64,000 nucleotides of DNA from Hemiscyllium ocellatum (Eukaryota), in NCBI RefSeq assembly GCF_020745735.1, contig NC_083433.1, positions 2,987,363-3,051,362 on the forward strand, written 5' to 3'. The notes beneath the pieces are model-generated. The model had not been told where the DNA came from and did no database searches. It was given only the letters and a program-made list of their open reading frames with translations. The first letter of the stretch is position 1. Each line of letters starts with the position of its first letter. Below, in pieces: positions 909 to 49,796 of this stretch. Made by a program: the position numbers and the translations under genes.

Positions 909-1840
909 ACTCCCGCCCTCGCCCCCCCTTCTCTCACAGGGCAATCCCTGATGAGACCCAGTGCCATGACAAAGGTGAACTCTCTCTCACTATCGAAAAC
1001 TCAGGCTCCAGATCAAGTTGAGTCCATGTTTCCCCAACCCCCACACCATCGTGACTCCTTCCCCATGTTTTAAATAACTGGAGCAGGGCAAATGTTGTCT
1101 CTGATCATTTGTAAGGGCTTCTCAAGTGAACAGGAATCACTGTGCTTCTAACCCAACATCCTCCCCTGGGAAAAAAACTTTGCTGAGCTGGCTACTTTGT
1201 GCTTTTCAGTAAATGAGAATAGCTTTCCTTCACACCCGACTCTGGCCCTGTGGCCCTGGGAAACACCGGTTGAGGCAGCATCCTGAACAATGGCCTGTTC
1301 CACACCTCGGCGCCAGTGGGAGCAGGGGCCCATAGTCTCTCGCGTTTGCTCCAGTCCTTTCCCCCAGCCCCATTCCCTGTCAGTGCTGGTGCTGTGCAAA
1401 GATCCCATTCCTGAGTGAGGGAGCTGGGAGGAGGGATAGTGAACTCGCAGAGAGGAGATGGCATTGGTGGGCTCATCCGGGGAGTGGGCAAGTTTTCAGC
1501 AGCCAACTGTTTTCCAGAATCAATAAGTAAACCTTAAATTAAAATAAATATATATACATATATATACCATTCCATCAAACATTATCTGCATTTCAGTGAT
1601 CACATCTTACAGAACAGGCTAGGCGACGTGGAAATATTTTATATTCACTTTAAGCACCTGCAGGAGTTATAATACGTGTTTCAAACTCAAGAATATTAAA
1701 CCCTGACCCAGTGATGATAGACACTTGTGGTGTATCAGAGTTTTCTCTCATTTAAACCAAGGGTTGCCCAGTAAAATGTGTAAAGGTTGCGTGTGAGGGA
1801 TTCGCATTCTGGTGTCACTCACTCCTGGCCGTCGCTTTCC

Positions 1841-2056
1841 TCAGTAATCCTGCGTCTGATATCCCTCTGAGGCGCTCGTGTAGGATCCTGTCGACAGTGG
1901 TTGCTGGTAAGAGCCTGGGGCTTCCATCTCGTCCCCGGAGAGGTACGGGCCGTAAGGGGCAGAGGTATCCTGGCTCGGGTCGGTGTACTCCTGGGAGAAA
2001 AGAGCAGAGTCGGCTCCCAGGCGGTACCGCTGGTATCCCAGGAATGCCTGAGCAGC
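1841..2056 (-). CDS. SYNGR1: synaptogyrin-1 terminal coding exon 4a (long isoform a-type C-terminus)
   Basis: Acceptor AG at 2058-2057, phase 0. Translates AAQAFLGYQRYRLGADSALFSQEYTDPSQDTSAPYGPY...EGYQTQDY* (TGA 1843-1841), matching the recalled SYNGR1a tail GADSALFSQDYMDPSQD. This frame is not in the ORF track. Confidence 0.95.
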   Translation of the reverse strand, partial: AAQAFLGYQRYRLGADSALFSQEYTDPSQDTSAPYGPYLSGDEMEAPGSYQQPLSTGSYTSASEGYQTQDY

Positions 2057-2094
2057 CTTTCAATGGAGCAAGGGCAGACAGGAGGCATAGACAA

Positions 2095-3417
2095 AGAGAG
2101 GGAGAGAGAGAGAGAAAACGAGAGAGAACGAGAGATAGAGCAGAGAGACAGAGAGCGCGAGAGATGGAGCAGGAACAGAGAGAGAGCGAGAGATGGAGCA
2201 GAGAGAGGGAGCGAGAGATGGAGAGCGAGAGATGGAGCAGAGAGAGAGAGGGAGCAACAGATGGAACAGAGAGAGCGAGAGATGGAGCAGAGAGAGCGAG
2301 AGATGGAGCAGAGAGAGCGAGAGATGGAGCACAGAGCGAGAGAGAGAGAGATGGAGCAGAGAGAGCGCGAGACATGGAGCAGAGAGAGAGCGAGAGATGG
2401 AGCAGAGAGAGAGAGAGAGAGCGAGAGATGGAGCAGAGAGAGAGAGAGAGAGAGCGAGAGATGGAGCAGAGAGAGAGAGAGAGAGCGAGAGATGGAGCAG
2501 AGAGAGAGAGAGCGAGAGATGGAGCAGAGAGAGAGAGAGAGAGCGAGAGATGGAGCAGAGAGAGAGCGAGAGATGGAGCCGAGAGAGAGCGAGAGGTGGA
2601 GCCGAGAGAGAGCGAGAGAGAGCGAGAGATGGAGCAGAGAGAGAGAGAGCGAGAGATGGAGCCGAGAGAGAGAGCGAGAGATGGAGCCGAGAGAGAGCGA
2701 GAGATGGAGCCGAGAAAGAGCGAGAGATGGAGCCGAGAAAGAGCGAGAGATGGAGCAGAGAGAGAGAGAGAGCGAGAGGTGGAGCCGAGAGAGAGCGAGA
2801 GAGAGCGAGAGGTGGAGCCGAGAGAGAGCGAGAGAGAGCGAGAGATGGAGCAGAGAGAGAGAGAGAGAGCGAGAGATGGAGCAGAGAGAGCGAGAGGTGG
2901 AGCAGAGAGAGCGAGAGATGGAGCAGAGAGAGCGAGAGATGGAGCAGAGAGAGCGAGAGATGGAGCAGAGAGAGCGAGAGATGGAGCAGAGAGAGCGAGA
3001 GATGGAGCAGAGAGAGCGAGAGATGGAGCAGAGAGAGCGAGAGGTGGAGCAGAGAGAGCGAGAGGTGGAGCAGAGAGAGCGAGAGGTGGAGCAGAGAGAG
3101 CGAGAGAGATGGAGCCGAGAGAGCGCGAGAGATGGAACCGAGAGATGGAACCGTGAGAGAGCGAGAGGTGGAGCAGAGAGAGCGAGAGGTGGAGCAGAGA
3201 GAGCGAGTGATGGAGCAGAGAGAGCGAGTGATGGTGCAGAGAGAGAGAGAGAGATGGAGCAGAGAGAGGGAGCGAGAGATGGAGCAGAGAGAGGGAGCGA
3301 GAGATGGAGCAGAGAGAGAGCGAGAGATGGAGCAGAGAGAGAGAGAGCAAGAGATGGAGCAGAGACAGAGTTAGAAATGGAGCAGAGAGAGAGAGAGAGA
3401 TGGGGCCAGAGAGAGAA

Positions 3418-3475
<58 letters not shown>
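2095..3475. repeat. GA-rich minisatellite, about 21-bp unit GAGATGGAGCAGAGAGAGCGA, ending in (GA)n
   Basis: Direct tandem repeat; explains the spurious RE/LS-rich ORFs. Confidence 0.95.
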
Positions 3476-3477
<2 letters not shown>

Positions 3478-3834
3478 GGGCAGAGATGGAATGGGTTTTG
3501 GGGAAGGAATGAGAGTGTAGGGAGTAGCAGGGCCATAGTAAAACAGACATCGAGAGGTGGAACAGTAAAAAGGACACTGCAGTTAGTGATGTTAGCATGC
3601 AGAATGTTAATGACCTTCAGAAAGCAAAGCACATTATGAGATCTGTGGTTAACACATTAGAAAGCAGTTTTAAAGGTCTTTGATATGAGCACTGCGACAA
3701 ATCCAAGCAGTTAATTGTTTTGCATCTGCAGATACACGTCAGTGATAAGGAAACATGGAATACTGAAACATTCTCAGCTCATGTCCATACTAACTCAGCT
3801 GTGGAGATTAACCTAACCAGCTAGAACCTTTTAT

Positions 3835-3985
3835 AAAACAGAGAACTGCAGATACTGGAAATCTGAAACGAAGTGCTGGAGAAACTCAGATCTGGCAACA
3901 TCTGTGAGGAAGGATCACTGCACCCAAAATGTTAACTCTGACTTCTGTCCACAGATGCTGCCACACCTGCCGAGTTTCTTGTAGC
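3835..3985. mobile_element. degenerate palindromic Penelope-terminal-repeat-derived element
   Basis: Arms AAACTCAG..TCTGGCAACATCTGTG / CACAGATGCTGCCAC..GAGTTT around an eroded hammerhead-like core; same family as 7307 and 25890. Confidence 0.55.
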
Positions 3986-4669
3986 AAGATCCTTTGTCAG
4001 GCTTTAAATCAATCCTGAAACCGATATAACTTTCGGGACGACACATGACACTTGCTGGGCTATGGGGAGTGGAAAATGTTAGAATCCCGCTGGACTGATA
4101 CACCCTACAGGCTCAAGTGAAGCTTATTTGCTGGAAGTACAAATATCCAAAGCAGACGGTGAAGACGATAAATAAACCAAACACGTTCATCAGCTCTTAG
4201 GATCACAATTTGCAAAATTAGCGAGTTAATGCAAGCAAGGGCAAGGGAAAGAGAGAGACAGCAGTGGTCAGGTGAAGCAGAGGCACAGCGAAACTTTGGA
4301 GGCCAAGGTAGACGAGAGAGAGAGAGGGTGAGTCTGAGGGTTATGACTATGAGCAAAGTGTGGGGCTCCTCAGATTACTTGATACTAAAACATCCTGTAT
4401 CTCAATCAGCAAACCGCCACAGGTACAGAGTGAGTTAAGGAGTAAGGTAGGGGTATGGGACAACTTACAAAGCTACACCTGCTTATTCTCACAGGCAATA
4501 AAATCAAATTTGCTTTCTCCCTCAAAAATCAGATTGGTCACCACAATCACGAGTTATAGCAGCATGAGAGAAAACCACTCAGGCAAGCAGGGATAGTCTA
4601 GCAGCTCACAGTGTTCAAACTGCTGTACTTCAGAGTCTGGGTGTTTGGAAGCAGAGAAGGATGCTGTAG

Positions 4670-4771
4670 TTAAGCAAGAGGAGGGGTTTGCTGGGGTGGG
4701 AACAATTTATTGTATTCCTCAGTGAAGGTGATGCCTTTTAATCGATCCATGGCAAAGAGAACCAAATAACC
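4670..4771 (-). CDS. SYNGR1: synaptogyrin-1 alternative terminal exon 4b (short isoform b-type C-terminus)
   Basis: Acceptor CAG 4774-4772, phase 0. GYLVLFAMDRLKGITFTEEYNKLFPPQQTPPLA* resembles the recalled human SYNGR1b end (..RFKDLSFQEEYSTLFP..). Confidence 0.85.
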   Translation of the reverse strand, partial: GYLVLFAMDRLKGITFTEEYNKLFPPQQTPPLA

Positions 4772-4958
4772 CTGCAAAAGGAAGGTGCAGGAATTGGAAT
4801 TGGAATTGGAATTAAAACACATGAGGATTGGAGGATGAAAAGTAGTCAGGATTGAAAATAGCAAGCTGTCACTAATAGCATCTCTATGCTCTGTTCTTCA
4901 GACCACTCATTAGAAATTAATGGGGTATATAACATAATCATCTGAAAGAAATGGTGAA

Positions 4959-5180
4959 TCTCCCCCTACACTGTTCCCCTCAAAAACTACCAGGACAGGG
5001 ACAGCATGGGATTACATAGAGTAAAGTTCCCCCTACTCTTTTAAACTCTCAGTGAGTTTCTCTCTACATTGTCCCCCTCAAATTCTCCAGGACAATGACA
5101 GCACGGGGTTAGATACAGAGTAAAACCCCCCTCTACACTGCTCAAACATTTCCAGGACAGGGACAGCATGGATTAGATAG
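4959..5180. repeat. short degenerate tandem repeat (CTCTACACTGTCCCC..CCAGGACAGGGACAGCATGGGGTTAGATACAGAGTAAA), about 3 units
   Basis: Motif blocks recur at about 4960, 5060 and 5130. Confidence 0.7.
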
Positions 5181-5654
5181 TCAAGCTCAGTGCATCATTC
5201 CCTCACTGACCATGAGTTAGTCTGCCACACTGATTCCTTGATGCTCTGTTGGGTAACTCAGACCCAAAATGTTGGAGTGCCAAGTGTTAATTGTTCAAGG
5301 GCTCCAATGCGCTGCCATCTTGGAATGTTGCTCATTGGATTTAATGATGTACCTGAAACGCTGCATCCTGCAAGTTTTTGAATCAGGTGCCAGAAAGCAG
5401 GATTCAACCAGGCAGCTGGTTTACTCAGCCAGTACACACAGGAGGCTGAATGGCCACCTTCTGTCTGTAAACTTTCTCTGGTTCTATGAAATCCCCTTGG
5501 TGCCCAGACAGGCGGTCAGTTTTCTCCACTGTGCTTTTCTGAATGGGATGTGAATGCATTGGCCCAAATTCTAGGCCAAGCCTTGAAAGTGAATGGGCAA
5601 GAGAAGATGGTCAACACTCTACTATCTCGATGTGATCCCAGGGGAAGGGTCATA

Positions 5655-5958
5655 GAATCCAGAAACAAGACAGTGCAGCAAGAGGCCATTCAGCCCATCA
5701 AATCTGCACCAATCCTCTAAAGAGTATTCCACCTCGACCAAACCCATCTCTGTAACCCCGCAGGGTTTTTTTTTTATCATGGCTAACCCACTTAACCTGC
5801 ACATACCTGGACACTGGGCAATTTTGAGCATGGCTTTGGACTGTGGAGGAAACCCCCACACAGACATGGGGAGAACGTGCAAACTCCACAAAGACAGTCG
5901 CCCAAGGGTGGTATCGAACCGGGGTCCCTGGTGCCGTATGGCACCTGGTCACTGTATT
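5655..5958 (-). mobile_element. HE1/V-SINE-type tRNA-derived SINE
   Basis: Conserved body TTTGGACTGTGGAGGAAACCC..GGGAGAACGTGCAAACTCCACA, shared with other copies in the window. Confidence 0.8.
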
Positions 5959-6042
5959 GCCCCTGTCGTTATGGGAGGAGGAGGGGTAGGTGTCAAACCC
6001 AGTGTACCAATGCTGTACAGGATCTAGAGTGAGACGACTTAC

Positions 6043-6191
6043 CCAGGTGAAGATTGAGAAGAAGGAGAAAGTGATAGCAGCTCGAGCAGCATCAGCTCCT
6101 TCCTGTAACGGGTCATCCTTCTCCAGATCCGTTACTTGCCACTGGTTGGTGAGGAAACAGAATCCCACAAACCATAGGAAAGACCAAAACG
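6043..6191 (-). CDS. SYNGR1: synaptogyrin-1 coding exon 3
   Basis: AG/GT flanked, 149 nt; (A)FWSFLWFVGFCFLTNQWQ...AARAAITFSFFSIFTW, MARVEL TM3-TM4. Confidence 0.97.
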
Positions 6192-7306
6192 CTGTTAGAA
6201 GAAACAAAACAAAGGAAACTGTGAATCTGCAGCAGAGGGAGGTGGGTCCTGAGGCATGAACAATCCAGAACACCATCCAAGCAGCATCATCGGTTCAGTG
6301 CAGAGCACAGACTGGAAGAGGGAGGGAAGAGAGACACTACATGTAAGGGTGCTGTCTCTGTGGGCAGCAGTAGTATGATGTGGTGGTGGGGGGAATCGCA
6401 GGTACCACAGAGGGAGCGAGCAAGACCACGTGGCACTGGGTGAGAGTGAGAGATAGCTCACAAGCTGCAGAGGGGGAGAACATGACAATAAGGGATTGAG
6501 CAAGAGAAACACAAGTGGAAAGGACATGTGACAGAGTGAGTGTATGCGAGAGGGTGCAGGCACATGAGAGAGAGAGCAAAAGGGGAAAGGAAGTTAGAGA
6601 AAGTGTGCACATTTGTGAGATACAGAGTGTGAGCATAGATGTAAGAGCGTACATAAATGGAGAGACAGAGGGAACGAGAGAGAGAGGGAATGCTACATTT
6701 GGAGTCACAGCTAACACTTATCGAATTAAACTCTGCTATTCCCATAGGAGTTCTCTCTTTGGTGTAAAGACCATATATTTTAATATTGTGAACGGTATGA
6801 AAATGGCTGTTTGAACACCAAGAATTATGGAAGGCATTTCTGAACATTTAAACAGTAAGTTTCTGAAATTCCTTCTAAGTTGTGTTTACCAGGGCTGGGC
6901 ACAAAACGAGATTCGGCTGGTAGCAGGTTGCTGAGTGGTTTGTAGAATTGTGATGAGTTGTGGATGCCAAAGGCCATCAGCTGACGATTACCTGATTGTC
7001 CCTGGGGTAGATGAACAGCTTGTGGGTGTGAACAATAGTAGCAGCAGCCTTTGGATTGCTACAAGGGACAACACGGTGTCTTCATCTCCAGTAAAACACC
7101 TAAAGTCTAAAGAATGCTACTTTATCTGCCCTCATCAGTTGCTGTAAGCTGTGGCCTTTAACCAGTAACAAGAAATTTTACAGCGAATGTATCAATTGTC
7201 TGTGCCTCCTCATAAATGAAACAAAAAACAAACCTGGGGAGAAAGATTGGAAAATGCCAACAAACAACTCAGTGACCTCTGTGGATGTGACCATTGAATC
7301 ATTTCC

Positions 7307-22656: not shown

Positions 22657-23988
22657 TTGTAATCTGAGATAATTTTCTTCACTGTCCACTACACCTCCAA
22701 TTTTGGTGTCATCTGCAAACTTACCTCTTACGTGCACATCCAAATCATTTATATAAATGACGAAAAGTAGTGGACCCAGCACCGATCCTTGTGGCACTCC
22801 ACTGGTCACAGGCCTCCAGTCTGAAAAACAACCCTCCACTACCACCCTCTGTCTTCTGCCTTTGAGCCAGTTCTGTATTCAAATGGCTAGTTCTTCCTGT
22901 ATTCCATGAGATCTAACCTTGCTCATCAGTCTCCATGGGGAACCTTGTCAAACGCCTTACTGAAATCCATATAGATCACATCTACTGCTCTGCCCTCATC
23001 AATCCTCTTGGTTACTTCTTCAAAAAGCTCAATCAAGTTAGTGAGATATGATTTCCCATTTATAAAACCATGTTGACTATCCCTAATAAGTCCTTGCCTT
23101 TCCAAATACATGTACATCCTATCCCTCAGGATTCCCTCTAACAACTTGCCCACCACTGATATCAGGCTCTGGTCAACTTGCCCACCGGCTGGTCACAGGC
23201 TCACTGGTCTAAAATTCCCTGGCTTGTCCTTATTACCCTTCTTAAACAGTGGCACCACGTTAGCCAACCTCCAGTCTTTCGGCACCTCACCTGTGACTAT
23301 CGATGATACAAATATCTCAGCAAGAGGCCCAACAATCACTTCTCTGGCTTCCCACAGAGTTCTCGGGTACACCTGATCAGGTCCTGGGGATTTCTCCACC
23401 TTTAACCGTTTCAAGACATCTAGCACTTCCTCCTCTGTAATCTGGACATTTTGCAAGATGTCACCATCTATTTCCCTACATTCTGTATCTTCCATGTCCT
23501 TTTCCACAGTAAATACTGATGCAAAGTACTCGTTTAGTATCTCCCCATCTCCTGCAGCTCCATACAAAAGCCGCCTTGCTGATCTTTGAGGGGCCCTATT
23601 CTCTCCCTAGTTACCCTTTTGTCCTTAATGTATTTATAAAATCCCTTTGGATTCTCCTTAACTATGTTTGCCAAAGCGATTTCATGTCCCTGTTTTGCCC
23701 TCCTGATTTCCCTCTTAAGTACTTCCTTTATACTTTAAGGATTCACTCGATCTATCCTGTCTATACTCACATATGGTTCCTTCTTTTCCTTAACCAAACC
23801 CTCAATTTTTTTAGTCATCCAGCATTCCCTATACTTACCAGCCTTTCCTTTCACCCTGACAGGAATTTACTTTCTCTGGATTCTCGTTATTTCATTTCTG
23901 AAGGCTTCCCATTTTCCAGCCATCCCTTTACCTGTGAACATCTGCCCCCAATCAGCTTTTGAACGTTCTTGCCTAATACTGTCAAAAT
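22657..23988 (-). mobile_element. CR1/HER1 LINE ORF2 fragment
   Basis: [64 protein letters not shown]. Confidence 0.92.
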
Positions 23989-24283
23989 CAAGTCAATGTT
24001 GGATTTATCACCAATGTCTGGTCACACTGAAAGGAGACTCCAGATGTATGGAAATGATCCACATTGTCCAGGGACTTGCTGTGGATTTTGATGGTTGGGG
24101 ACTCAGGGTAGCGTAGCAGGACTGAGTTGGTCCCAAACCTTTCTCTTCAGAATGTGTAATCTGAGACACATCCTCAGTGAATGCATCATTGATAGACTTT
24201 TTTTAAAAAGATTAGATTCCCTTCATTGTGGAAACAGGCCCCCTGCTCAACAAGTCCACACCAACCCTCCGAAGAGTAACCCT

Positions 24284-24470
24284 GTGGTGGAGGCTGGTAC
24301 AAATGCAACATTTAAGAGGCATTTGGATGGGTATATGAACAGGAAGGGTTTGGAGGGATATGGGCCGGGTGCTGGTAGGTGGGACTAGATTGGGTTGGGA
24401 TATGTGGTCGGCACGGACTGGTTGGACTGAAGGGTCTGTTTCCATGCTGTACATCTCTATGACTCTATGA
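24284..24470 (+). mobile_element. CR1/HER1 LINE 3' end, right half
   Basis: GTGGTGGAGGCTGGTAC...CTCTATGACTCTATGA tail, colinear with 45050-45240. Confidence 0.8.
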
Positions 24471-25889
24471 ACACAAGTTTAAAGATTTCAGAACAACAGT
24501 AAAATACAATCGCATTAATCACAACAGGACTTATTTAAATTACTCACACCAGAGAAAACTCCCTTCACCATCACATCTTTCAGACTTAATTTAATTTGGC
24601 TTCAGTTTCCAGTCTTGAGAATCTGATGGCCTCTTTAAGCCTTCACACACAGTTTAAATTTCTCAGCACTGAATAACCCCTTCAGGGCTTTAACCAAACA
24701 ATTCTGGCCTGAAATTTCAAACTAAACTCCTTATATGGAGGTATCCTATTCCTCAACATTTCTAAATTGTCTCCTTTCTACAGGAGCAACTGTTTTAAAC
24801 ATTCAACCAATACTTCTGCAAATGGAAATCAAGCTTTGGGCATCTCCACTCAGACAAGAACAATTAATCTCTGACCTTCTAAAATGAACTCCAAAGCACA
24901 ACTATATACATGTACTCTGCTCATTCCCAAAACTTACCTAAATGTAAATAAAACCAACTACTCTCCAAAAACTCACTCTCACATGTTTTGAATAAAAAAA
25001 TCACCATGGCTACAGAGATACTTACAAATTAATCATTAAACAGACTCAAAACCCACTTACCACTAGTCCAAAATCCAAAAGTCTGAAATACATGATATTA
25101 CAATATATAGAAACCATACACCTTACATCACAGATCATGATTCCCAAAGACAACAAATGAAGTTGATTTTATCACTCTGGGCATTTGAACCACACAATAC
25201 CACTCAAAGTGGCTGCTGACCTTCTGCTTACAATCGCAACTTGCATCAGAAGAATATTTTAGCCTATTTAACATTAGGGTAAGGTATGGGTTGTAACAGG
25301 TTCATCACTGGGAGCTGAATGTGATTTTAAATATACAAATCAAAGAACATCGTACAACTGTATCACATACATTAACAGGTAGCAATACAGATGCAATTTC
25401 TCCTATAATGTGCTGATACCAGCATTTTAAAAATGTACATACATGCCTATAATACAAAGTGGAAATCACCTACTTCAACTCGTATCTAATGAGACATTTA
25501 TCCAAGGCTTACCTCGACTCTCTCAGAGGAATGAAAAGGGACTATGGTTCTGAAGGAGAATAGAGGAATTCTACCATATTGTCCTGATCAATATTTAACC
25601 CTCAATCATCACCACTAAAAATCAAATTATTTGATCATTTGTATATTGTTGTTTGTGGCACCTTGCTGTAGACAGATTCCCTGCCTTCCTTACTACAATG
25701 AAATGGGGATGATGCTTCTGTCTAGAGTTTTGGGATGTTCTAAGGTTCTCAAAGGTGCTGCAAAAGTAGGGGACAGTCCTTATCCTTCCTTTAAAAGCCA
25801 GTTCTAGCATAATTGTAACTCTGCCACCATACACAGCGCACCAAAAATAAATTTGCTGGTCCACATCATTAAGCATATGTAATACTTTT

Positions 25890-26077
25890 TAACTGAAATA
25901 AGAACTGCAGATGTTGGAAGTCCGAAATAAAAGCAGAAATTGCTGAAGAAACTCAGCAGGTCTGGCAGCAACCTGAAGGGGTTCTGAAGAAGGGTCACTG
26001 GACTCCAACATTACCTTGGTTTTGCTCTCCACAGATGCTGCCAGACCTGAATTTTTCCAGCAATTTCTGTTTTTGTT
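25890..26077. mobile_element. palindromic Penelope-terminal-repeat-derived element
   Basis: Arms CAGAAATTGCTG..CAGGTCTGGCAGCA / TGCTGCCAGACCTG..CAGCAATTTCTG around CTGAAGAAGGGTC..GACTC. Confidence 0.65.
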
Positions 26078-27924
26078 ATGGGTTTTTATTGGGCCAGCTT
26101 TTAATTTGACTTAAAACAAAGCTCTCTGTCATGGTGGGGAGAGGAATTTGAACCAATGTTCCCTGAACATTTGCCTGGGGCTCTGCAGTGCTAGCCCACT
26201 GAATGTACCGCAAGATCACTGTTTCCCGACTGCAGTATGTTCTCTGTCAGAAGATGGGGAATGTGGCAGTCAATTTGTATACTGAAAATTCTCACAAACA
26301 GCAATGTTGCAATGACCAGATCCTAACTTTTTAAAAAGTGCAGAAAATGGGCCAGTATACTGGGGAAGAAGTCTCTACTCTTCATCAAATAATGGTCAAG
26401 GGGATCCTTTATCCTGTCATCCCCAATGAGCGTCGATGATGCAGACTACAAACAACATGTGAGCATAACAAAGCTCCAAATGAATAACCACCTTTTCATC
26501 AAAAACAGACATACAGCACAGCTCAGTTCACAACGCCATAGACATGTGCCCATGTTGGCAATTTCCCACTGCCATCACAGCTCACTGCAGGGTGTCCCAC
26601 TAAACACACTGCCTTTACATACAATGAAACACACCCAGTATCGCTCCAGCCAGCCCAGCTGACCTTAAGGAATTCTCATTCACCCTCCAATAATCAGTGC
26701 TTCTACACCAGGGAGGAGAAACCTAGCATGATTCAGCCACAAAGCATGTCGTATACAAAGGATGCTGAATATTGTCCATGAACAATATACCTGAGAGGGC
26801 CAAAGAACCTCAAAATCAAAATACCAGCATCAATCCTTCAAGTCCTGTGGCAAGAAAGATAGTCCTCTCCCACGCCCACCTGCCCAGCACTTGAGGCACT
26901 GATCATTCAAAATCAGCCCCGCTGAATGGGACATGTCATGCCTGACACCAGACTTTGAAAACAATTGCTTGACTAGGAACGAGTGTGGCAAGAGACTCCC
27001 ACGAATGCAGCGAAAATACCTTGGGGTGTCCTCAAAACCTGCGATCAGCTAAAATACCCGCTCCAACTCACTTCTGACCCTGTCTCGTCAAAAAGTGTGG
27101 TGCTGGAAAATCACAGATGGTCAGGCAGCACCTGAGGAGCTGGGCAGAAGCCCTTCATCACCTTTTCTGAAGAAACTGCAGAATGAATGGATGAGGCTAA
27201 GGCTGTAGGTGTGACGTACATGGACTTCCAAAAGGTGTTCAATTCCAGTGCCACTCAACAGACTTGAGGAAAGTGAGAGATCATGAAATAAAAGGGATTT
27301 GAAGCAAGGTAGGTAGAAGATCAGCTGAGGATTACAACACAGAGTCATCGTACACAAGCATTTTTCAGGCTGCAGAACAGTTTAGAATGGATTTCCCCAG
27401 GGTACAGTATTGGGATCCTTGCCTTTCTTGTAATATATTAATATCTGAATCTCAGTGAGCAGGAGATAATTTCAAAGTTTGATTTGGTTTATTATTGTCA
27501 CGTGTACTAAGATAGAGTGAAAAGTATTGTTTTGTGTGCTAACCAGACAAATCATACCTTACATAAGTACATCAGGCGAATAGAACAGAATGCAGAATGT
27601 AGTGCTACAGCAACAGAGAAGGTGCAGAGAAAGATCAACTCTAATATGAGAGGTCCGTATATAAGTCTGATAACAGTGGGGAAGAAGCTGTTCCTAAGTT
27701 TGCGGACAATACAAACCTTGGAAAAAATGTAAACTAGGAAGAAGACAGTGTAAACCTTAAAAAGGACACTGACATATTGGTGGAGTGGGCAGATAGGTGG
27801 CAGATGAAGATCAGTGCAGCAAAGTGAGGTGATGCATAGGTATAAAGAACATGGGGAAACATTAACAGCTGTAATATTCAAAAGGGTGTGCAGGAGTTCA
27901 GAGACCAGAGCATCTGTGCATTAA

Positions 27925-30429: not shown

Positions 30430-32590
30430 ATGCACACACACACACAAACAGTCAGGCCGAGAGCGAGAGAGATACACACACACAGACAGACAGGCCGAGA
30501 GTGAGACCGACACACACACAGACAGACTGGCTGAGAGCGAGAGAGATACACACGCACAGACAGACAGGCCGAGAGTGAGACCGACACACGCACAGACAGA
30601 CAGGCCGAGAGCGAGAGTGATACACACGCACAGACAGACTGACCGACAGCGAGTGATCGACACACGCACAGACAGACAGGCCGAGAGCGAGAGATCGACA
30701 AACGCACAGACAGACTGGCCGAGAGCGAGAGATCGACACACTCACAGACAGACAGGCCGAGAGCGAGAGATCGACAAACGCACAGACAGACTGGCCGAGA
30801 GCGAGCGATCGACACACTCACAGACAGACAGGCCGAGAGCGAGAGATCGACACACGCACAGAGACAGACAGGCTGAGAGCGAGAGAGATACACACGCACA
30901 GACAGACAGGCCGAGAGCGAGAGAGATACACACGCACAGAGACAGTCAGGCCGAGAGCGAGAGAGATACACACACACAGACAGACAGGCCGAGAGTGAGA
31001 CCGACACACACACAGACAGACTGGCTGAGAGCGAGAGAGATACACACGCACAGACAGACAGGCCGAGAGTGAGACCGACACACGCACAGACAGACAGGCC
31101 GAGAGCGAGAGTGATACACACGCACAGACAGACTGACCGACAGCGAGTGATCGACACACGCACAGACAGACAGGCCGAGAGCGAGAGATCGACAAACGCA
31201 CAGACAGACTGGCCGAGAGCGAGAGATCGACACACTCACAGACAGACAGGCCGAGAGCGAGCGATCGACAAACGCACAGACAGACTGGCCGAGAGCGAGC
31301 GATCGACACACTCACAGACAGACAGGCCGAGAGCGAGAGATCGACACACGCACAGAGACAGACAGGCTGAGAGCGAGAGAGATACACACGCACAGACAGA
31401 CAGGCCGAGAGCGAGAGAGATACACACGCACAGACAGACAGGCCGAGAGCGAGAGATCGACACACGCACAGACAGACAGGCCGAGAGCGAGAGATCGACA
31501 CACGCACAGAGACAGACAGGCTGAGAGCGAGAGAGATACACATGCACAGACAGACTGGCCGAGAGCGAGAACGACACACGCACAGTCAGACTGGCCGAGA
31601 GCGAGAGAGATACACACGCACAGACAGACAGGCCGAGAGCGAGAGACCAACACACGCACAGACAGACTGGCCGAGAGCGAGAGACCGACACACGCACAGA
31701 CAGACAGGCCGAGAGCGAGAGAGATACACACACCCAGACAGACAGGCCGAGAGCGAGAGAGATACACACAGACAGGCCGAGAGCGAGAGAGATACACACG
31801 CACAGACAGACAGGCCGAGAGCGAGAGAGATACACACAGACAGGCCGAGAGCGAGAGACCGACACATGCACAGACAGACTGGCCGAGAGCAAGAGAGATA
31901 CACACGCACAGACAGACAGGCCGAGAGCGAGAGACCGACACACGCACAGACAGACAGGCCGAGAGCGAGAGACCAACACACGCACAGACAGACAGGCCGA
32001 GAGCGAGAGACCGACACACGCACAGACAGACAGGCCGAGAGCGAGAGAGATACACACGCACAGACAGACAGGCCGAGAGCGAGAGACCAACACACGCACA
32101 GACAGACTGGCCGAGAGCGAGAGACCGACACACGCACAGACAGACAGGCCGAGAGCGAGAGACCGACACACGCACAGACAGACAGGCCGAGAGCGAGAGA
32201 GATACACACACCCAGACAGACAGGCCGAGAGCGAGAGAGATACACACAGACAGGCCGAGAGCGAGAGAGATACACACAGACTGGCCGAGAGCAAGAGAGA
32301 TACACACGCACAGACAGACAGGCCGAGAGCGAGAGACCGACACACGCACAGACAGGCCGAGAGCGAGAGACTGACACACAGACAGACAGGCTGAGAGCAT
32401 GCGAGAGACGCAGACTGGCAGGCAGAGGGCGAGAGACACAGACAGACAGGCCAAGAGCGAAAGAGACACATATACACACACACACAGACTGGTCAAGAGT
32501 GAGAGACAGACAAACAGATTGGCCGAGTGAGAGACAGCACAAGGCACATAACAGCGACCAGGTGAGAATGAGAGAGAGACACACACTCAG
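30430..32590. repeat. 38-40 bp minisatellite CACACGCACAGACAGACAGGCCGAGAGCGAGAGA(GATA/TCGA/CCGA)
   Basis: Direct tandem repeat; source of the CVCLS/THRQ ORFs. Confidence 0.95.
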
Positions 32591-33349: not shown

Positions 33350-36300
33350 CCTTACCACCCCTCCCCCGCCTCCCTCACACTCCCACCCTCACGGCCCTCC
33401 CCACCCCTCACCCCCCCTTCCCCACTACACCATACCCCCTCCCTCACCCCTCACACCCCCCACATTCACACCCCCGCTCCCTTATCTCCTCCCACACCCC
33501 AACCCCAATCCACCCCTAAACTCCCAGCCTCAGACCCCCCCTTCCGCACTCCCCGGTTGCCCAACACCCCTCCTTACCCACCCCCCATGCCCACTCCCAC
33601 ACACCCATTCTGCAACCCACCCCCTCCTGAACCTCTCAACACCCCTCCCTCCTCGCATTCCCCCTCTTCCCCCACTCCTCCTCCCCCTCTCCCTCACCAC
33701 TTCCCTCCTCCCCCTCCCTCCACCCCCACTCCCTCACCATCTCCCCCTCGCTCCTCCCCCTCCTTCTCCCTCACCCCCTCCCCTCCTCCCCCTCCCCTCT
33801 CTCACCCCCCTCCCTCCTTCCCCTCCACTCTCTCACCCCCCTCCCTCCTTCCCCTCCCCTCTCTCACCCCCCTCCCTCTCCACTCTCTCGCCCCCCTCCC
33901 TCTCCACTCTCTCGCCCCCCCTCCCTCTCCACTCTCTCGCCCCCCCTCCCTCTCCACTCTCTCGCCCCCCTCCCTCCTCCCCCCCACGCTCTCACACCCC
34001 TCTGCCTCACCTCTCTCACCCTTCTCCTTTCCTCTTCCCCCTCCCCCCACACTGACCCACCCCTCTCTCTCCCCTCTCCCTCCTCCCCCTCCCTTCTCTC
34101 CCCATCCTCACCTCCCCCTCACCCCTCTCCCTCACTGACCCTCCCCACTCCCCCTCTCCCTCACTGACGCTCCCCCCTCTTCCTCACTGACCCACCCCCC
34201 TCACCCTTCCCTTTCTCCCTCCTCCCCCTCTCCCTCACTGACCCTCCCCTTCCCCCCCTTCCTCACTGACCCACACCCCTCTCCCCTCTTCCTCCTGCAC
34301 TGACCCTCCCCTCTCTCACCCCACTCACCCCTCTGCCTCCTCCCCTCACCTTCACTGACCCTCCCCGCTCACACCCCTCTCACCCTCACTGCTCATCCCC
34401 TCTCCCTCCCCCTCACTGATCCTCCTTTCTCCCTCCTCCCCCCTCTCCCTCACTCATCCTCCCCTCTCCCTCCTCCCCCTCTCCCTCCTCCCCCTCTCCC
34501 TCAGTGATCCTCCCCTCCCCCTCACTGATCCTCCCCTCACCCCCTCCCCCTACTCCCTCACTGACCCTCCCCTCTCACCCCCTCTCCCTCCTCCCCGCTC
34601 TCCCTCACTGATCCTCCCCCTCCCTTCACCCCCTCTCCCTCACTGATCCTCCCTTCTCTCACCCCTCTCCCTCATTGACCCTCCCCTCTCTCACCCCTCT
34701 CCCTCACTGACCCACCCCTATCCCCCCCACTCCCTCACTGATCCTCCCCTCTCACCCCCGTCCCCCTCACTGATCCTCCCTTCTCCCCCCACTCCCTCAC
34801 TGATCCTCCCCTCTCCCTCCTCCCCCCCTCCCCCACTGATCCTCCCCTCTCCCTCCTCCCCCCTCGCCCTCACTGATCCTCCCCTCTCCCTCCTCCCCTC
34901 TCCCTCACTGACCCTCCCCTCTCTCACCCCTCTCCCTCATTGACCCTAACCTCACTCACCCCTCTCCCTCATTGACCCTCCCCTCTCTCACCCCTCTCCC
35001 TCACTGACCCACCCCTATCCCCCCCACTCCCTCACTGATCCTCCCTTCTCCCCCCACTCCCTCACTGATCCTCCCCTCTCCCTCCTCCCCCTCACTGACC
35101 CTCCCCTCTCTCACCCCTCTCCCTCATTGACCCTAACCTCACTCACCCCTCTCCCTCATTGACCCTCCCCTCTCTCACCCCTCTCCCTCACTGACCCACC
35201 CCTATCCCCCCCACTCCCTCACTGATCCTCCCTTCTCCCCCCACTCCCTCACTGATCCTCCCCTCTCCCTCCTCCCCCCTCTCCCTCACTGACCCTCCCC
35301 TCTCTCACCCCTCTCCCTCATTGACCCTAACCTCACTCACCCCTCTCCCTCACTGATCCTCCCCTATCCCCCCTCCCACTCCCTCACTGACGCTCCCCGC
35401 TCACCCCCTTCCCCCTCTCCCTCACTGATCCTCCCCTCACCCCCTCCCCTACTCCCTCACTGATCCTCCCCCTCTCCCCTCCTGCCCCTCCCTCACTGAT
35501 CCTCCCCTCTCCCTCCTCCTCCTCTCCCTCACTGATCCTCCCCTCTCCCTCCTCCTCCTCTCCNNNNNNNNNNNNNNNNNNNNNNNNNNNNNNNNNNNNN
35601 NNNNNNNNNNNNNNNNNNNNNNNNNNNNNNNNNNNNNNNNNNNNNNNNNNNNNNNNNNNNNNNNNNNNNNNNNNNNNNNNNNNNNNNNNNNNNNNNNNNN
35701 NNNNNNNNNNNNNNNNNNNNNNNNNNNNNNNNNNNNNNNNNNNNNNNNNNNNNNNNNNNNNNNNNNNNNNNNNNNNNNNNNNNNNNNNNNNNNNNNNNNN
35801 NNNNNNNNNNNNNNNNNNNNNNNNNNNNNNNNNNTCTCCCTCCTCCCTCACTGATCCTCCCCTCTCCCTCCTCCCCCCTCCCTCACTGATCCTCCCCTCT
35901 CCCTCCTCCACCCTCCCTCACTGATCCTCCCCTCTCCCTCCTCCACCCTCCCTCACTGATCCTCCCCTCTCTCCCCCCTCTCCCTCACTGACCCTCCCCC
36001 TCACACTCCCCCCTCCCACTCCTCCTCCTCCGACTCCCCCTCTCCCTCACTGACCCTTGCCTCTCTCATCCCTCTCCCTCACTGACCCTCCCCTCTCTCA
36101 CCCCTCTCCCTCATTGACCCTCCCCTCTCTCACCCCTCTCCCTCATGGACCCTCCCCTCTCTCACCCCTCTCCCTCATTGACCCTCCCCTCTCTCACCCC
36201 TCTCCCTCATTGACCCTCCCCTCTCTCACCCCTCTCCCTCTTCCCCCCTCCCTCACTGACCCTCCCCCTCACCCCTCTCCCTCCTCCCCACTCTTCCTCA

Positions 36301-37994
36301 CTGACCCTCCCCCCTCACCCATCTCCCTCCTCTCCTCTCTACCCCTCTCCCTCACTGACCCTCCCCCCTCTGCCTCACTGACCCTCCCCTCTCTCCCCAC
36401 TCTCCTTCCTCCCCCCTCTCCCTCACTGACCCTCCCCTCTCTCCTCCCTCTCCCTCACTGACCCTCCCCTCTCTCCCCGCTCTCCCTCCTCCCCCCTCTC
36501 CCTCACTGACCCTCCCCTGTCTCTTCCCTCTCCCTCCTCCCCCCTCTCCTGCCCTGATCCTCCCCTCTCTCCCCTCACCCTTCTCCCTCACTGATTCTCC
36601 CCTCTCTCCCCCCCACTCCTTTCCCCCCTCTCCCTCACTGATCCTCTCCTCTCTCCCCCCTCCCTCACTGATCCTCCCCTCTCTCCCCCACTGATCCTCC
36701 CCTCTCTCCCCCACTGATCCTCCCCTCTCTCCCCCCTCACCCCCTTCTCCCCCACTGATCCTCCCCTCGCTCCCCCCCTCACCCCCTTCTCCCTCACTGA
36801 TCCTCCCCTCGCTCCCCCCCTCACCCCCTTCTCCCTCACTGATCCTCCCCTCGCTCCCCCCCTCACCCCCTTCTCCCTCACTGATCCTCCCCTCGCTCCC
36901 CCCTCACCCCACTCCCCCTACGCCCTCACTGATCCTCCCCTCTCTCCCCCCCTCATTGATCCTCCCCTCTCACCCCCCTCCCTCACTGATCCTCCTCGCT
37001 CCCTCCTCCCCCCTCTCTCTCTCACTGATCCTCCCCTCCCCCTCCTCCCCCCTCTCCCTCACTGATCCTCCCCTCACCCCCTCCCCTACTCCCTCACTGA
37101 CCCTCCCCTCTCTCACCCCTCTCCCTCATTGACCCTCCCCTCTCTCACCCCTCTCCCTCATTGACCCTCCCCTCTCTCACCCCTCTCCTCATTGACCCTC
37201 CCCTCTCCCCTCCCACTCCCTCACTGACCCTCCCCTCTCTCACCCATCACCTTCCTCCCCCCTCTCCCTCACTGATCCTCCGTTCTCTCCCCCTCTCCCT
37301 CACTGACCCTCCCTTCTCTCACTCCTCTTCCTCACTGACCCTCCCGTCTCTCACCCCTTTCCCTCACTGACCCTCCCCTCTCTCACCCCTCTCCCTCACT
37401 GACCCTCCCCTCTCTCACCCCTCTCCCTCACTGACCCTCCCGTCTCTCACCCCTCTCCCTCCCCCCACTCTTCCTCACTGACCCTCCCCCCTCACCCTCA
37501 CTGACCCTCCCCTCTCTCCTCCCCCTCTCCCTCACTGACCCTCCCCTCTCTCCCCGCTCTCCCTCCTCCCCCTCTCCCCCACTGATCCTCCCCTCTCCCC
37601 CCTCACCCCTCTCCCCCCTCACCCCTCTCCCTCACTGATCCTCCCCTCTCCCCCCTCACCCCTCTCCCCCCTCACCCCTCTCCCTCACTGATCCTCCCCT
37701 CTCCCCCCTCACCCCTCTCCCTCACTGATCCTCCCCTCACCCCCCTCCCTCACTGATCCTCCCCTCTCCCCCCTCACCCCCCTCCCTCACTGATCCTCCC
37801 CTCTCCCCCCTCACCCCCCTCCCTCACTGATCCTCCCCTCTCCCTCCTCACCCCCCTCACCCCCCTCCTCCCTCCTCACCCCCTCACCCCCCTCACTGAC
37901 CCCCTCACCCCCCTCACTGACCCCCTCACCCCCCTCCTCCTCCTCCCTCACTGACCCCCCTCACCCCCCTCCTCCTCCCTCACTGACCCCCCCC
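33350..37994. repeat. C/T-rich low-complexity array, core CCCTCACTGA(T/C)CCTCCCCTCTC (gap at 35564-35834)
   Basis: Direct tandem repeat abutting the SYNGR1 exon 1 donor. Confidence 0.95.
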
Positions 37995-37998
37995 TTAC

Positions 37999-38100
37999 CC
38001 AGCTGACGGCCCTCACGATGGTCTGCGGTTGTTTGATGAAGGTGACGGGGTCGAACGCTCCCCCCGCGCGCCCGGCTCCATAAGCTGCTGCAGCCTCCAT
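37999..38100 (-). CDS. SYNGR1: synaptogyrin-1 coding exon 1
   Basis: ATG at 38100; MEAAAAYGAGRAGGAFDPVTFIKQPQTIVRAVSW then GTAAG donor; synaptogyrin N-terminal motif YGAGxAGGAFDP. Confidence 0.96.
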
Positions 38101-49440: not shown

Positions 49441-49796
49441 AACCTTAATCCTCACCACAACTCTAACCATCACCTTGACCCTAACCTAACTCTTTCCCTA
49501 ACCCTAATCCTAACGCAACTCTAACCCTAATCCTCACCCTAACCCTAACTCGAATCCTAACCCTAACCCTAACAATCACCTAACCTTCACCCTAATCCTA
49601 AGCCTAACTTTAACTCAACCCTAACTCTAACCCTTACCCTGACTCTCACCCACAGCCTAACCCTCAACCTAATCCTAACCCTCATCCTCACCCTATCCCT
49701 AAATCTAACCCTCACCTAACCCTACCCTGACCCTAAACCCTAATCCTAACCTTAACTCTAACCTTGACCCTAAACCCTAACCCTGACCCTAACCCT
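49441..49796. repeat. degenerate interstitial telomere-like (CCCTAA)n array
   Basis: Hexamer periodicity with CCCTAA, CTCTAA, CCCTCA and CCCTGA variants. Confidence 0.85.

What the first reader, a model, noticed from the sequence alone, without database searches (positions are those of the whole stretch)
2059..3601. 1.5-kb AG-exclusion zone with distal branch-point, QKI and RBFOX motifs before the SYNGR1a exon
Seen: reading by eye, the transcribed (minus) strand has no AG from 3576 to the acceptor at 2058 (about 1518 nt), including the non-repeat flanks. No good yUnAy branch point lies near the acceptor. At the far edge cluster UGCAUG (3601-3596), UGCUAAC (3597-3591) and CACUAAC (3588-3582), with a further UUCUAAC at 3376-3370. 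The interval is a UCUCU-rich repeat. Known: long AG-free zones mark distant branch points (usually a few hundred nt at most), PTBP1 binds CU repeats, RBFOX binds UGCAUG and QKI/SF1 bind ACUAAC. Inference: an ancestral distant-branch acceptor was stretched by an AG-free repeat, giving an extreme branch distance and a PTB-repressible neuronal switch between exons 4b and 4a.
Basis: partly seen in the sequence, partly recalled or inferred. Interest (0 to 1): 0.7.

Follow-up and report, generated by a model that had tools for sequence, protein, structure and literature searches.

The report
Conserved distant branch site, stretched by repeat
In front of the last (neuronal-type) exon of a shark synaptogyrin-1 gene lies an ancient far-upstream branch-site signal, and a 1.4-kb CT-rich repeat has pushed it about 1.5 kb from its splice site; this is a natural test of how far apart the two can work, but the actual branch site has not been mapped.

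Summary

About 91% of the zone is one 21-23-nt CT-rich minisatellite (2095-3474). GA is also absent from it, so the array lacks AG because of its composition.

The gene matches epaulette shark (Hemiscyllium ocellatum) synaptogyrin-1 exactly. Exon 4a is the 1a-type terminal exon and exon 4b is an upstream alternative terminal exon.

New evidence comes from orthologous introns:
- **Elasmobranchs:** whale shark, sevengill shark and an electric ray carry the same block, UAACA-N-CACUAAC-N-G-N-AG|UGUCCU, exactly at the 5' edge of an 83-84% pyrimidine AG-free zone of 491, 195 and 211 nt.
- **Goose and sturgeon:** ACUAAC-type motifs lie at the edge of AG-free zones of 124 and about 1100 nt.

Exon 4a therefore looks like an ancient distant-branch-point / mega-polypyrimidine-tract acceptor whose spacer expanded in some lineages.

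- **RBFOX:** not supported. There is one UGCAUG, as chance predicts, and it is not conserved.
- **PTB and QKI control:** plausible by analogy, untested.

AG-free zones over 1 kb are already in the literature, so this is a new member of a known class.

The parts
3560..3740 (-). Conserved intronic block that ends in the distal branch-site cluster
   Evidence: Alignable with Rhincodon and Heptranchias (blastn E 3e-32 for 3734-3408). Its core is the best hit of the whole 5.9-kb Narcine intron, at the homologous place. The alignment is A1.
3582..3597 (-). Tandem branch-point-like / STAR-protein motif UGCUAAC-AU-CACUAAC (UAAC-N3-ACUAAC); candidate branch adenosines at 3592 and 3583
   Evidence: U2-pairing scores are 13 and 12 of 14, the best in the whole AG-free zone. 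UAACA-N-CACUAAC is invariant in four elasmobranchs. ACUAAC occurs only 5 times on this strand of the 64-kb window.
3596..3601 (-). UGCAUG hexamer (proposed RBFOX site), judged a chance occurrence
   Evidence: It is the only copy in the 3986-nt intron, against 0.97 expected. It is not conserved in Rhincodon, Heptranchias or Narcine.
3577..3578 (-). AG that closes the zone upstream, 6 nt after the candidate branch A at 3583; too close to be used as a 3' splice site
   Evidence: One search gives the position. Published minimum branch-to-AG distance is about 8-12 nt (PMC5378181, PMC1431707). This AG is conserved in all four elasmobranchs.
3475..3576 (-). Non-repeat pyrimidine-rich tract directly after the branch cluster (UGUCCUUUUUACUGUUCC...), the branch-adjacent polypyrimidine tract
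   Evidence: UGUCCU is invariant in the orthologues.
2095..3474 (-). CT-rich minisatellite, unit GCUCCAUCUCUCGCUCUCUCU plus variable (CU)n, about 60-64 units; 12 CUCUCU per 100 nt
   Evidence: Tandem-repeat call; 50 copies at 2 or fewer mismatches, only here in the window; composition and dinucleotide counts; motif density.
2059..2094 (-). Non-repeat 3' flank ending in the weak acceptor context CCAUUGAAAG; it holds only poor branch candidates (A2088 at -32, A2064 at -8)
1841..2058 (-). Acceptor AG (2058-2057), exon 4a coding sequence 2056-1844 and stop codon 1843-1841 (synaptogyrin-1a-type C-terminus)
   Evidence: 100% match to residues 164-234 of P0001.
2048..2049 (-). Alternative acceptor AG 9 nt downstream (CAG|GCA), giving the annotated isoform X2 that lacks the residues AAQ
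   Evidence: P0124 reads SIFTW|AFLGYQRY.
4670..4773 (-). Exon 4b: strong acceptor UUUUGCAG| (AG 4773-4772), coding sequence 4771-4673, stop 4672-4670; the upstream alternative terminal exon (1b-type)
   Evidence: 100% match to residues 164-196 of P0132. 1b-type isoforms occur from sharks to birds, teleosts and lungfish.
6041..6191 (-). Exon 3 (6191-6043) and its donor GT (6042-6041), the 5' splice site shared by exons 4b and 4a

Best explanation
The stretch is the 3' end of intron 3 of the epaulette-shark synaptogyrin-1 gene, in front of terminal exon 4a.

It has two layers:
1. An old, conserved distant-branch-point module: a tandem UAAC-N3-ACUAAC branch-site / STAR-protein motif, directly followed by a pyrimidine tract and then an AG-free, roughly 85% pyrimidine spacer that runs to a weak (A/C)AG|G acceptor.
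2. A lineage-specific 1.38-kb CT-rich minisatellite that grew inside that spacer. It stretched the spacer from an ancestral 120-210 nt to 1518 nt.

The array is AG-free because its unit is AG-free. It could expand here because an AG-free, pyrimidine-only insert does not create a competing 3' splice site.

Proposed working (inferred):
- SF1, U2AF and U2 assemble on the distal ACUAAC and its adjacent tract.
- Step 2 of splicing takes the first AG more than about 8-12 nt downstream. That is AAG at 2058-2057, with CAG at +9 as a competitor.
- The long CU tract and the dual ACUAAC give PTB-type and QKI-type repressors a platform. Cells that express them would use the strong upstream terminal exon 4b, and cells that lack them (neurons) would use 4a.

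Shown: the sequence anatomy, exon identity and cross-species conservation.
Inferred: branch usage, the regulators and tissue specificity.

I put about 0.8 on the distant branch point being ancestral and functional in elasmobranchs. I put about 0.4 on the branch still forming more than 1 kb upstream in this species.
For: - AG-free zone and motif positions.
- Exon identity: all exons match P0001, P0124 and P0132 (H. ocellatum isoforms X1, X2, X3) at 100%. The coding span of 36,260 nt equals the span recorded for that assembly.
- Orthologous introns: Rhincodon 491 nt, Heptranchias 195 nt and Narcine 211 nt are AG-free and 83-84% pyrimidine. Each begins at ...UUAACA-N-CACUAAC-N-G-N-AG|UGUCCU.
- Alignment A1 shows these bases invariant. 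In the Heptranchias comparison the only alignable parts of the intron are exon 4b, a repeat family and this block. In Narcine the block is the top hit of the intron.
- The block keeps its position relative to exon 4a, not to exon 4b. Its distance from 4b ranges from about 0.9 to 4.2 kb.
- Goose: a 124-nt AG-free zone with CACUAAC at -113 and UACUAAC at -96, and nothing better closer.
- Sturgeon: about 1100 nt AG-free with 12 GA, and CUGACUAAC...CACUAAU at the 5' edge.
- The proximal 100 nt of the window has no credible branch site; the best score is 5 of 14.
- CUCUCU density is 12.3 per 100 nt in the spacer against 0.25 in the rest of the intron.
- Literature: criteria for the distant-branch-point / AG-free-zone class, and PTB exons of this type (PMC1431707). 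Distal branch sites are conserved and sit in conserved intronic islands (PMC5378181). The dBP / mega-polypyrimidine-tract organisation is described in PMC7969005. QKI represses exons through tandem ACUAAC branch sites by out-competing SF1 (PMC11483029). Human SYNGR1 switches from an intronic to the distal poly(A) site during neural differentiation (PMC13601535).
Against:
- Within the window the absence of AG carries no independent weight: GA is also 0 in the array.
- No validated branch-to-3'-splice-site distance exceeds about 400 nt (PMC1431707), and distance weakens 3' splice-site use (PMC5378181). After the expansion a weak non-consensus proximal adenosine, such as A2088 at -32 or one of about 59 CCAUC/CCACC adenosines, may have taken over.
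- Rhincodon, Narcine and sturgeon do have moderate proximal candidates at -43 to -71.
- The goose and sturgeon motifs are analogous in position but cannot be aligned to the shark block.
- Sharks evolve slowly, so conservation within Orectolobiformes alone is weak evidence.
- PTB/QKI regulation and neuronal specificity in sharks are untested. No paper was found linking SYNGR1 with PTBP1 regulation or with QKI.
Confidence: 0.6

Rival explanations
1. Repeat by-product with a proximal branch. In this shark the acceptor now uses a weak, non-consensus branch adenosine close to the exon or inside the last repeat units, helped by the huge pyrimidine tract. The 1.5-kb AG-free zone is then only the footprint of an AG-less minisatellite. 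The distal ACUAAC cluster would be a relic, or only a regulatory site.
For: - The array has 0 GA as well as 0 AG, and the flanks are not significantly AG-poor.
- Gooding et al. describe exactly this artefact class, a repeat lacking AG combined with a conventional branch site (PMC1431707).
- No branch distance above about 400 nt has been validated. Vertebrate branch sites are degenerate, and usage correlates poorly with U2 complementarity (PMC7969005).
Against: - In Gooding's artefact cases a good proximal branch site exists and the orthologue has a short AG-free zone. Here the best proximal score is 5 of 14.
- The orthologues keep AG-free zones of 124-491 nt with the conserved distal block.
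- The distal block shows no decay in this species.
Confidence: 0.3
2. The conserved block is not a branch site in any species. It would be an intronic regulatory element, for example a QKI/STAR, MBNL or NOVA binding site or an element serving exon 4b 3'-end formation. The AG-free zone would then be a side effect of a long pyrimidine tract kept for protein binding.
For: - Conservation extends about 150 nt upstream of the ACUAAC, over UGCU- and YCAY-containing segments.
- The bipartite UAAC-N3-ACUAAC fits the QKI site better than a single branch site would need.
Against: - The block sits exactly at the 5' edge of the AG-free zone in all four elasmobranchs, with a pyrimidine tract directly after it. 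That is the defining layout of mapped distant branch points (PMC1431707).
- Heptranchias and goose have no alternative branch candidate within 100 nt apart from one at -12.
- QKI sites of this kind are themselves branch sites (PMC11483029).
- The block's distance to exon 4b varies about 4-fold.
Confidence: 0.06
3. The array length is an assembly artefact (an expansion), and the real spacer is much shorter.
For: Long low-complexity arrays are error-prone. The window has three N gaps inside other repeats. No read evidence could be laid.
Against: - The array is degenerate and structured, with 23 perfect copies and 27 variant copies at variable spacing, which does not look like a collapsed or duplicated block.
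- DNA runs of the same species hold 83-86% of the sampled words of 1000-6400, which could not be reached if the array's quarter of the words were missing. These runs may be the source sample.
- Independent assemblies of whale shark and sturgeon show expansions of 0.5 and 1.1 kb at the same place.
Confidence: 0.04

Closest known systems
Distant-branch-point exons marked by AG exclusion zones (Gooding et al. 2006, PMC1431707): TPM1 exon 3, PTBP1 exon 11, ACTN1 SM exon
   Same: A consensus branch sequence with an adjacent pyrimidine tract lies at the 5' end of a long AG-free zone. There is no good branch site in the conventional place, the arrangement is conserved in orthologues, the exon is alternatively used and the spacer is CU-rich.
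   Different: The mapped distances are 175-400 nt, against a spacer of 1518 nt here. Here 91% of the spacer is a minisatellite. The regulated exon is a terminal exon competing with an upstream terminal exon, not a cassette or mutually exclusive exon. Nothing has been mapped experimentally.
Human PTPRS exon with an AG-free zone of 1126 nt, against 229 nt in the mouse orthologue (noted in PMC1431707)
   Same: An AG-free zone over 1 kb in one species and about 200 nt in an orthologue, with candidate distal branch sites and no verification.
   Different: A different gene. Here the series spans six species and the distal motif is shown to be conserved.
OGDH exon 4a/4b dBP / mega-polypyrimidine-tract organisation (PMC7969005)
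   Same: An ancient distal branch site plus a very long pyrimidine tract that acts as a protein platform, conserved over hundreds of millions of years, with an AG-free zone protected from spoilers.
   Different: In OGDH the architecture restricts intron size and excludes insertions. Here the tract itself expanded 5- to 10-fold in three lineages. OGDH tracts are U-rich and TIA/PUF60-responsive, whereas this one is CU-rich.
QKI versus SF1 competition at tandem ACUAAC branch sites (RAI14 exon 11; PMC11483029)
   Same: Two branch-like UAAC/ACUAAC elements lie a few nucleotides apart upstream of an alternatively used exon. The layout matches the QKI bipartite site.
   Different: Only one full ACUAAC plus a GCUAAC/UAAC half-site is present. 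It lies 1.5 kb rather than tens of nucleotides from the exon. No binding or expression data exist for sharks.

Membership tests
Distant-branch-point / AG-exclusion-zone exon class | [quoted passage not shown] | tested here: met
   1518 nt in the window. Orthologues have 491, 195, 211, about 1100 and 124 nt.
Distant-branch-point / AG-exclusion-zone exon class | Consensus branch sequence with an adjacent pyrimidine tract near the 5' end of the zone | tested here: met
   UGCUAAC and CACUAAC at 3597-3582 score 13 and 12 of 14 for U2 pairing. UGUCCUUUUU... follows directly.
Distant-branch-point / AG-exclusion-zone exon class | No good branch candidate in the conventional 18-50 nt window | tested here: met
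   No yUnAy within 1097 nt of the exon; best proximal score 5 of 14.
Distant-branch-point / AG-exclusion-zone exon class | Long zone and distal motif conserved in orthologues, so not merely a species-specific AG-less repeat | tested here: met
   The block is invariant in four elasmobranchs, with non-repeat spacers of 195-211 nt. Goose and sturgeon have analogous motifs.
Distant-branch-point / AG-exclusion-zone exon class | AG avoidance in the spacer beyond what composition gives | tested here: inconclusive
   Window array: 0 AG and 0 GA. Sturgeon spacer: 12 GA with no AG, mono-shuffle P about 0.008. The short spacers are individually not significant. The zone is defined by AG absence, so the test is partly circular.
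Distant-branch-point / AG-exclusion-zone exon class | Branch mapped to the distal adenosine (lariat RT-PCR, mutagenesis, inserted AG becomes the 3' splice site) | not testable with these tools
PTB-repressed exon | Clusters of UCUU / CUCUCU motifs in the tract upstream of the exon | tested here: met
   12.3 CUCUCU per 100 nt in the spacer against 0.25 in the rest of the intron. The tract is pyrimidine-rich in all six species.
PTB-repressed exon | PTBP1 binding, or a change in exon use on PTBP1 depletion | not testable with these tools
   No paper was found that shows SYNGR1 to be a PTBP1 target.
QKI/SF1 dual branch-site switch | ACUAAY core plus a UAAY half-site within 1-20 nt | tested here: met
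   UAAC at 3594-3591 and ACUAAC at 3587-3582, with identical spacing in four elasmobranchs. Goose and sturgeon have two or more such motifs within 30 nt.
QKI/SF1 dual branch-site switch | QKI occupancy and QKI-dependent repression | not testable with these tools
   No data; one search found no paper.
RBFOX-regulated exon | Conserved (U)GCAUG near the regulated exon, above chance | tested here: not met
   One UGCAUG against 0.97 expected. The homologous bases read UGCACG in Rhincodon and UGCAUA in Heptranchias, and are absent in Narcine.
Synaptogyrin-1 (MARVEL family) gene with 1a/1b alternative terminal exons | Exons encode a synaptogyrin-1 protein with 1a- and 1b-type C-termini | tested here: met
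   100% to P0001 and P0132; PF01284 is precomputed for the hits; 1b-type tails occur from shark to bird.

The most novel reading that the evidence does not exclude
In the epaulette shark, and perhaps in the sturgeon, productive splicing of the main neuronal synaptogyrin-1 exon uses a branch point 1.3-1.5 kb upstream of its 3' splice site. The second-step search for the AG would then cross a 1.5-kb unstructured CU tract. That is about four times farther than any validated branch-to-acceptor distance. The series goose, ray, sevengill shark, whale shark, epaulette shark (124, 211, 195, 491, 1518 nt) would then be a natural titration of that distance.
Probability: 0.35. Interest if true: 0.75.

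Novelty: new member of a known kind. Interest (0 to 1): 0.55.

Why it matters
How far a branch point can lie from its 3' splice site, and how the spliceosome finds the AG in step 2 (by linear scanning or by diffusion), is still open. In vitro substrates cannot be made long enough to test it (PMC5378181).

This locus offers one conserved distal branch module with natural spacers from 124 to 1518 nt in front of the same essential exon. Lariat mapping and minigenes from these species would make the question directly testable.

It also suggests that pyrimidine-only repeats are a tolerated way for such tracts to grow. That contrasts with OGDH, where the same architecture forbids expansion (PMC7969005).

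Finally, it gives a concrete hypothesis for the neuronal 1a versus non-neuronal 1b choice in SYNGR1: repression through a QKI-type dual branch site and a PTB-type CU tract. If instead the branch has moved close to the exon, the finding reduces to an ordinary repeat next to a splice site, plus a well-conserved ancestral distant branch point.

Tried and rejected
1. **Read evidence.**
   - The look-up of sequencing runs returned only assembled contigs. None is on record as RNA, although X8 and X10 look like RNA of the same animal.
   - As a result no splice junctions, lariats or array-length check were obtained.
Three shorter isoforms were not on record.
3. **RBFOX reading** rejected.
4. **AG avoidance within the array as evidence of selection** rejected, because GA is equally absent.
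5. **RNA structure bridging the branch site and the acceptor.**
   - An MFE fold of 3720-1900 pairs only about 18% of array bases.
   - The only long-range helix is 12 bp, between 3490-3477 and exon bases 1923-1936.
   - Almost any repeat unit could form that helix (UCCAUCUC with GAGAUGGA), so it is not convincing.
6. **The AG at 3578-3577 as a real acceptor, or a recursive splice site**, rejected. There is no pyrimidine tract before it and no 5'-splice-site-like sequence after it. The open frames through the repeat are a trivial result of stop-free composition.
7. **The block as part of exon 4b's 3' end** rejected, because its distance to 4b varies about 4-fold while its position at the edge of the AG-free zone is fixed.
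8. **Literature gaps.** The Gooding 2006 supplements hold no SYNGR1 entry by name; they use database identifiers, so this says little. No paper was found that links SYNGR1 splicing to PTBP1, or SYNGR1 to QKI.
9. **Earlier notes of this scan** held nothing relevant.
Full report
**What is there**

On the minus strand the window carries a four-exon synaptogyrin-1 gene.
- Exon 1 lies at 38100 to about 37999, and exon 2 at about 8584-8345.
- Exon 3 lies at 6191-6043, with its donor GT at 6042-6041.
- Exon 4b is an upstream alternative terminal exon: acceptor AG 4773-4772, coding sequence 4771-4673, stop 4672-4670.
- Exon 4a is the terminal exon: acceptor AG 2058-2057, coding sequence 2056-1844, stop 1843-1841.

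A database search with exon 3 found synaptogyrin-1 proteins. The Hemiscyllium ocellatum isoforms X1, X2 and X3 (P0001, P0124, P0132) match every exon of the window at 100%. The start-to-stop span in the window, 36,260 nt, equals the span recorded for that gene in the H. ocellatum assembly. The window is therefore almost certainly epaulette shark.

Isoform X1 uses the acceptor at 2057|2056. Isoform X2 uses a CAG 9 nt downstream (2049-2048). Isoform X3 ends in exon 4b. The same 1a/1b pair of C-termini is annotated from sharks to birds, teleosts and lungfish.

**The observation**

The minus strand has no AG between 3576 and 2059, a stretch of 1518 nt. This is by far the longest such gap on that strand of the window.

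The nearest yUnAy to the acceptor is CUCAC at 3157-3153, 1097-1098 nt away. Within 100 nt of the exon the best U2-pairing candidate scores 5 on a scale where UACUAAC scores 14 (the script's printed 'max 13' should read 14).

The bulk of the zone (2095-3474) is one tandem array of a 21-nt unit, GCUCCAUCUCUCGCUCUCUCU, with variable CU spacers. It has 50 copies at 2 or fewer mismatches and none elsewhere in the window.

**Is the AG gap more than chance?**

Inside the window, no.
- The array holds 59 A and 127 G, but its adenosines are nearly always in CCAUC or CCACC. AG is 0, and so are GA (0), AA (1) and TA (2).
- AG and GA have the same number of mutational opportunities in this array, so nothing singles out AG.
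- The two non-repeat flanks lack AG with P about 0.20 and 0.47 under shuffling.
- Long AG-free stretches caused by repeats also occur on the other strand of this window, for example 3.5 kb at 34503-38001.
- Gooding et al. warned of exactly this artefact.

**What changes the picture: orthologous introns**

I fetched the gene from whale shark (L001), sevengill shark (L003), an electric ray (L002), sterlet sturgeon (L004) and swan goose (L005).

In the three other elasmobranchs the intron in front of exon 4a has the same layout. An AG-free, 83-84% pyrimidine spacer of 491, 195 and 211 nt begins directly after ...UUAACA-N-CACUAAC-N-G-N-AG|UGUCCU.
- In the four-species alignment these bases are invariant.
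- Between the window and Heptranchias the only alignable parts of the 4-5.6-kb intron are exon 4b, a dispersed repeat and this block (3734-3408, E 3e-32).
- In the ray the 24-nt core is the best hit of the whole 5.9-kb intron, at the homologous place.
- The block keeps its position at the 5' edge of the AG-free zone, while its distance from exon 4b varies from about 0.9 to 4.2 kb. It therefore belongs to exon 4a rather than to exon 4b.

The two bony-vertebrate loci show analogous motifs.
- The goose has a 124-nt AG-free tract whose 5' end carries CACUAAC (-113) and a perfect UACUAAC (-96), with nothing better closer.
- The sturgeon has about 1100 nt without AG (apart from one at -5) but with 12 GA. 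The tract starts at AG|CUGACUAAC...UCACUAAU followed by a U-rich tract, and it also contains a C/CT-rich repeat of roughly 700 nt.
- These motifs are analogous in position but cannot be aligned to the shark block.

An ACUAAY within 30 nt of the zone's edge in three independent lineages is unlikely by chance. The window holds only 5 ACUAAC in 64 kb on that strand.

**Reading**

By the criteria of Gooding et al. this is a distant-branch-point exon: a consensus branch site plus a pyrimidine tract at the 5' end of a long AG-free zone, no conventional candidate, and conservation in orthologues (PMC1431707). Taggart et al. found that distal branch sites are conserved and lie in conserved intronic islands, and that an AG needs at least about 8 nt from the branch (PMC5378181). 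That fits the conserved AG 6 nt after A3583 being skipped.

The ancestral spacer was probably 120-210 nt. It grew in the whale-shark/epaulette-shark lineage, where both share a CUCGCUCUCUCU core, and much further in the epaulette-shark line through the 21-nt unit. It grew independently in the sturgeon. A pyrimidine-only, AG-free repeat is the kind of insert such an acceptor can tolerate.

**How it probably works (inferred)**

SF1, U2AF and U2 would assemble at the distal ACUAAC and its adjacent tract. Step 2 then takes the first suitable AG, AAG at 2058-2057, with the better CAG 9 nt on as competitor. Both are annotated.

The acceptor is weak (UUGAAAG|G), whereas exon 4b has a strong one (UUUUGCAG|G).

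The spacer is saturated with CUCUCU (12.3 per 100 nt against 0.25 elsewhere), the classic PTB ligand found in known exons of this class (PMC1431707).

The invariant UAAC-N3-ACUAAC matches the QKI bipartite site. QKI has been shown to repress exons by out-competing SF1 at tandem ACUAAC branch sites (PMC11483029). PTBP1 and QKI are low in neurons; that is general knowledge and was not tested here.

Human SYNGR1 switches from an intronic to the distal poly(A) site during neural differentiation (PMC13601535). A PTB/QKI-repressible choice between 4b and 4a is therefore coherent but untested.

The RBFOX part is not supported. There is one UGCAUG where 0.97 is expected, and it is not conserved.

**What remains open**

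It is not known whether the branch in this shark still forms 1.3-1.5 kb upstream.
- For: there is no proximal candidate and the distal block is intact.
- Against: no validated distance exceeds about 400 nt, distance weakens 3' splice-site use, and vertebrate branch choice is flexible.

I put this at about 0.35-0.4.

Array length could not be checked with reads. The degenerate structure of the array, the word shares of DNA runs and similar expansions in two independent assemblies argue against an artefact.

**Limits**

Only six species could be compared. No RNA or lariat evidence was available.

**Novelty and score**

Distant-branch-point exons, mega-polypyrimidine tracts (PMC7969005) and even an unverified 1126-nt AG-free zone (PTPRS) are already known. 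I found no report for SYNGR1.

This is a new, deeply conserved member of a known class, with an unusually large repeat-made spacer and a useful natural length series. Interest 0.55.

Noticed in passing
window 2048-2049 (minus strand): A second acceptor, CAG|GCA, lies 9 nt inside exon 4a. It matches annotated isoform X2 (P0124, lacking the residues AAQ). A weak AAG followed closely by a CAG is what first-AG scanning with nearby competition would give.
   Followed up: partly
window 1991-1992 (minus strand): There is an in-frame internal acceptor with a good pyrimidine tract (CUCUGCUCUUUUCUCCCAG|GAG) 66 nt into exon 4a. The equivalent site is used by the Heptranchias perlo isoform X1 model (P0006: FTW|DYTDPSQD). 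If the upstream acceptor fails, this conventional-looking site could rescue a protein 22 residues shorter.
   Followed up: no
window 34067-37995, with an N gap at 35564-35834: A 3.9-kb array, C-rich on the plus strand and G-rich on the transcript strand, has periods of about 32, 48 and 102 nt. It starts within a few bases of the exon 1 donor (exon 1 coding sequence 38100 to about 37999). It gives a 3.5-kb AG-free gap on the plus strand, so intron 1 begins with kilobases of GGGAGRGG-type repeat.
   Followed up: no
window 30434-32398: A 38-nt minisatellite of about 52 copies (ACACACACGCACAGACAGACAGGCCGAGAGCGAGAGAG) lies in intron 1.
   Followed up: no
window 49435-49796: An interstitial telomere-like array, (AACCCT) x about 61, lies upstream of the gene.
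   Followed up: no
window 1923-1930 versus the repeat units in 2095-3474: Exon 4a contains GAGAUGGA (codons for D-E-M-E), the exact complement of the repeat core UCCAUCUC, which is present about 40 times in the intron. The MFE fold pairs 3490-3477 with 1923-1936. This may be chance: roughly 0.07 for any 8-mer of the unit.
   Followed up: partly
Reverse-transcriptase ORF fragments of a LINE lie in intron 1.
   Followed up: no
L003 (Heptranchias) about 22700-26800: The part of intron 3 between exon 4b and the conserved block is 81% pyrimidine, with 24 CCC per 100 nt. This is a multi-kilobase C-rich array upstream of the branch block in that species.
   Followed up: no
L004 (Acipenser ruthenus) 22804-23905: The sturgeon has an independent C/CT-rich repeat expansion of roughly 700 nt at the same intronic position. 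An AG at -5 (GAGAAG|G) is skipped by the annotated acceptor. No 4b-like exon was found between exons 3 and 4a by a simple peptide pattern.
   Followed up: partly
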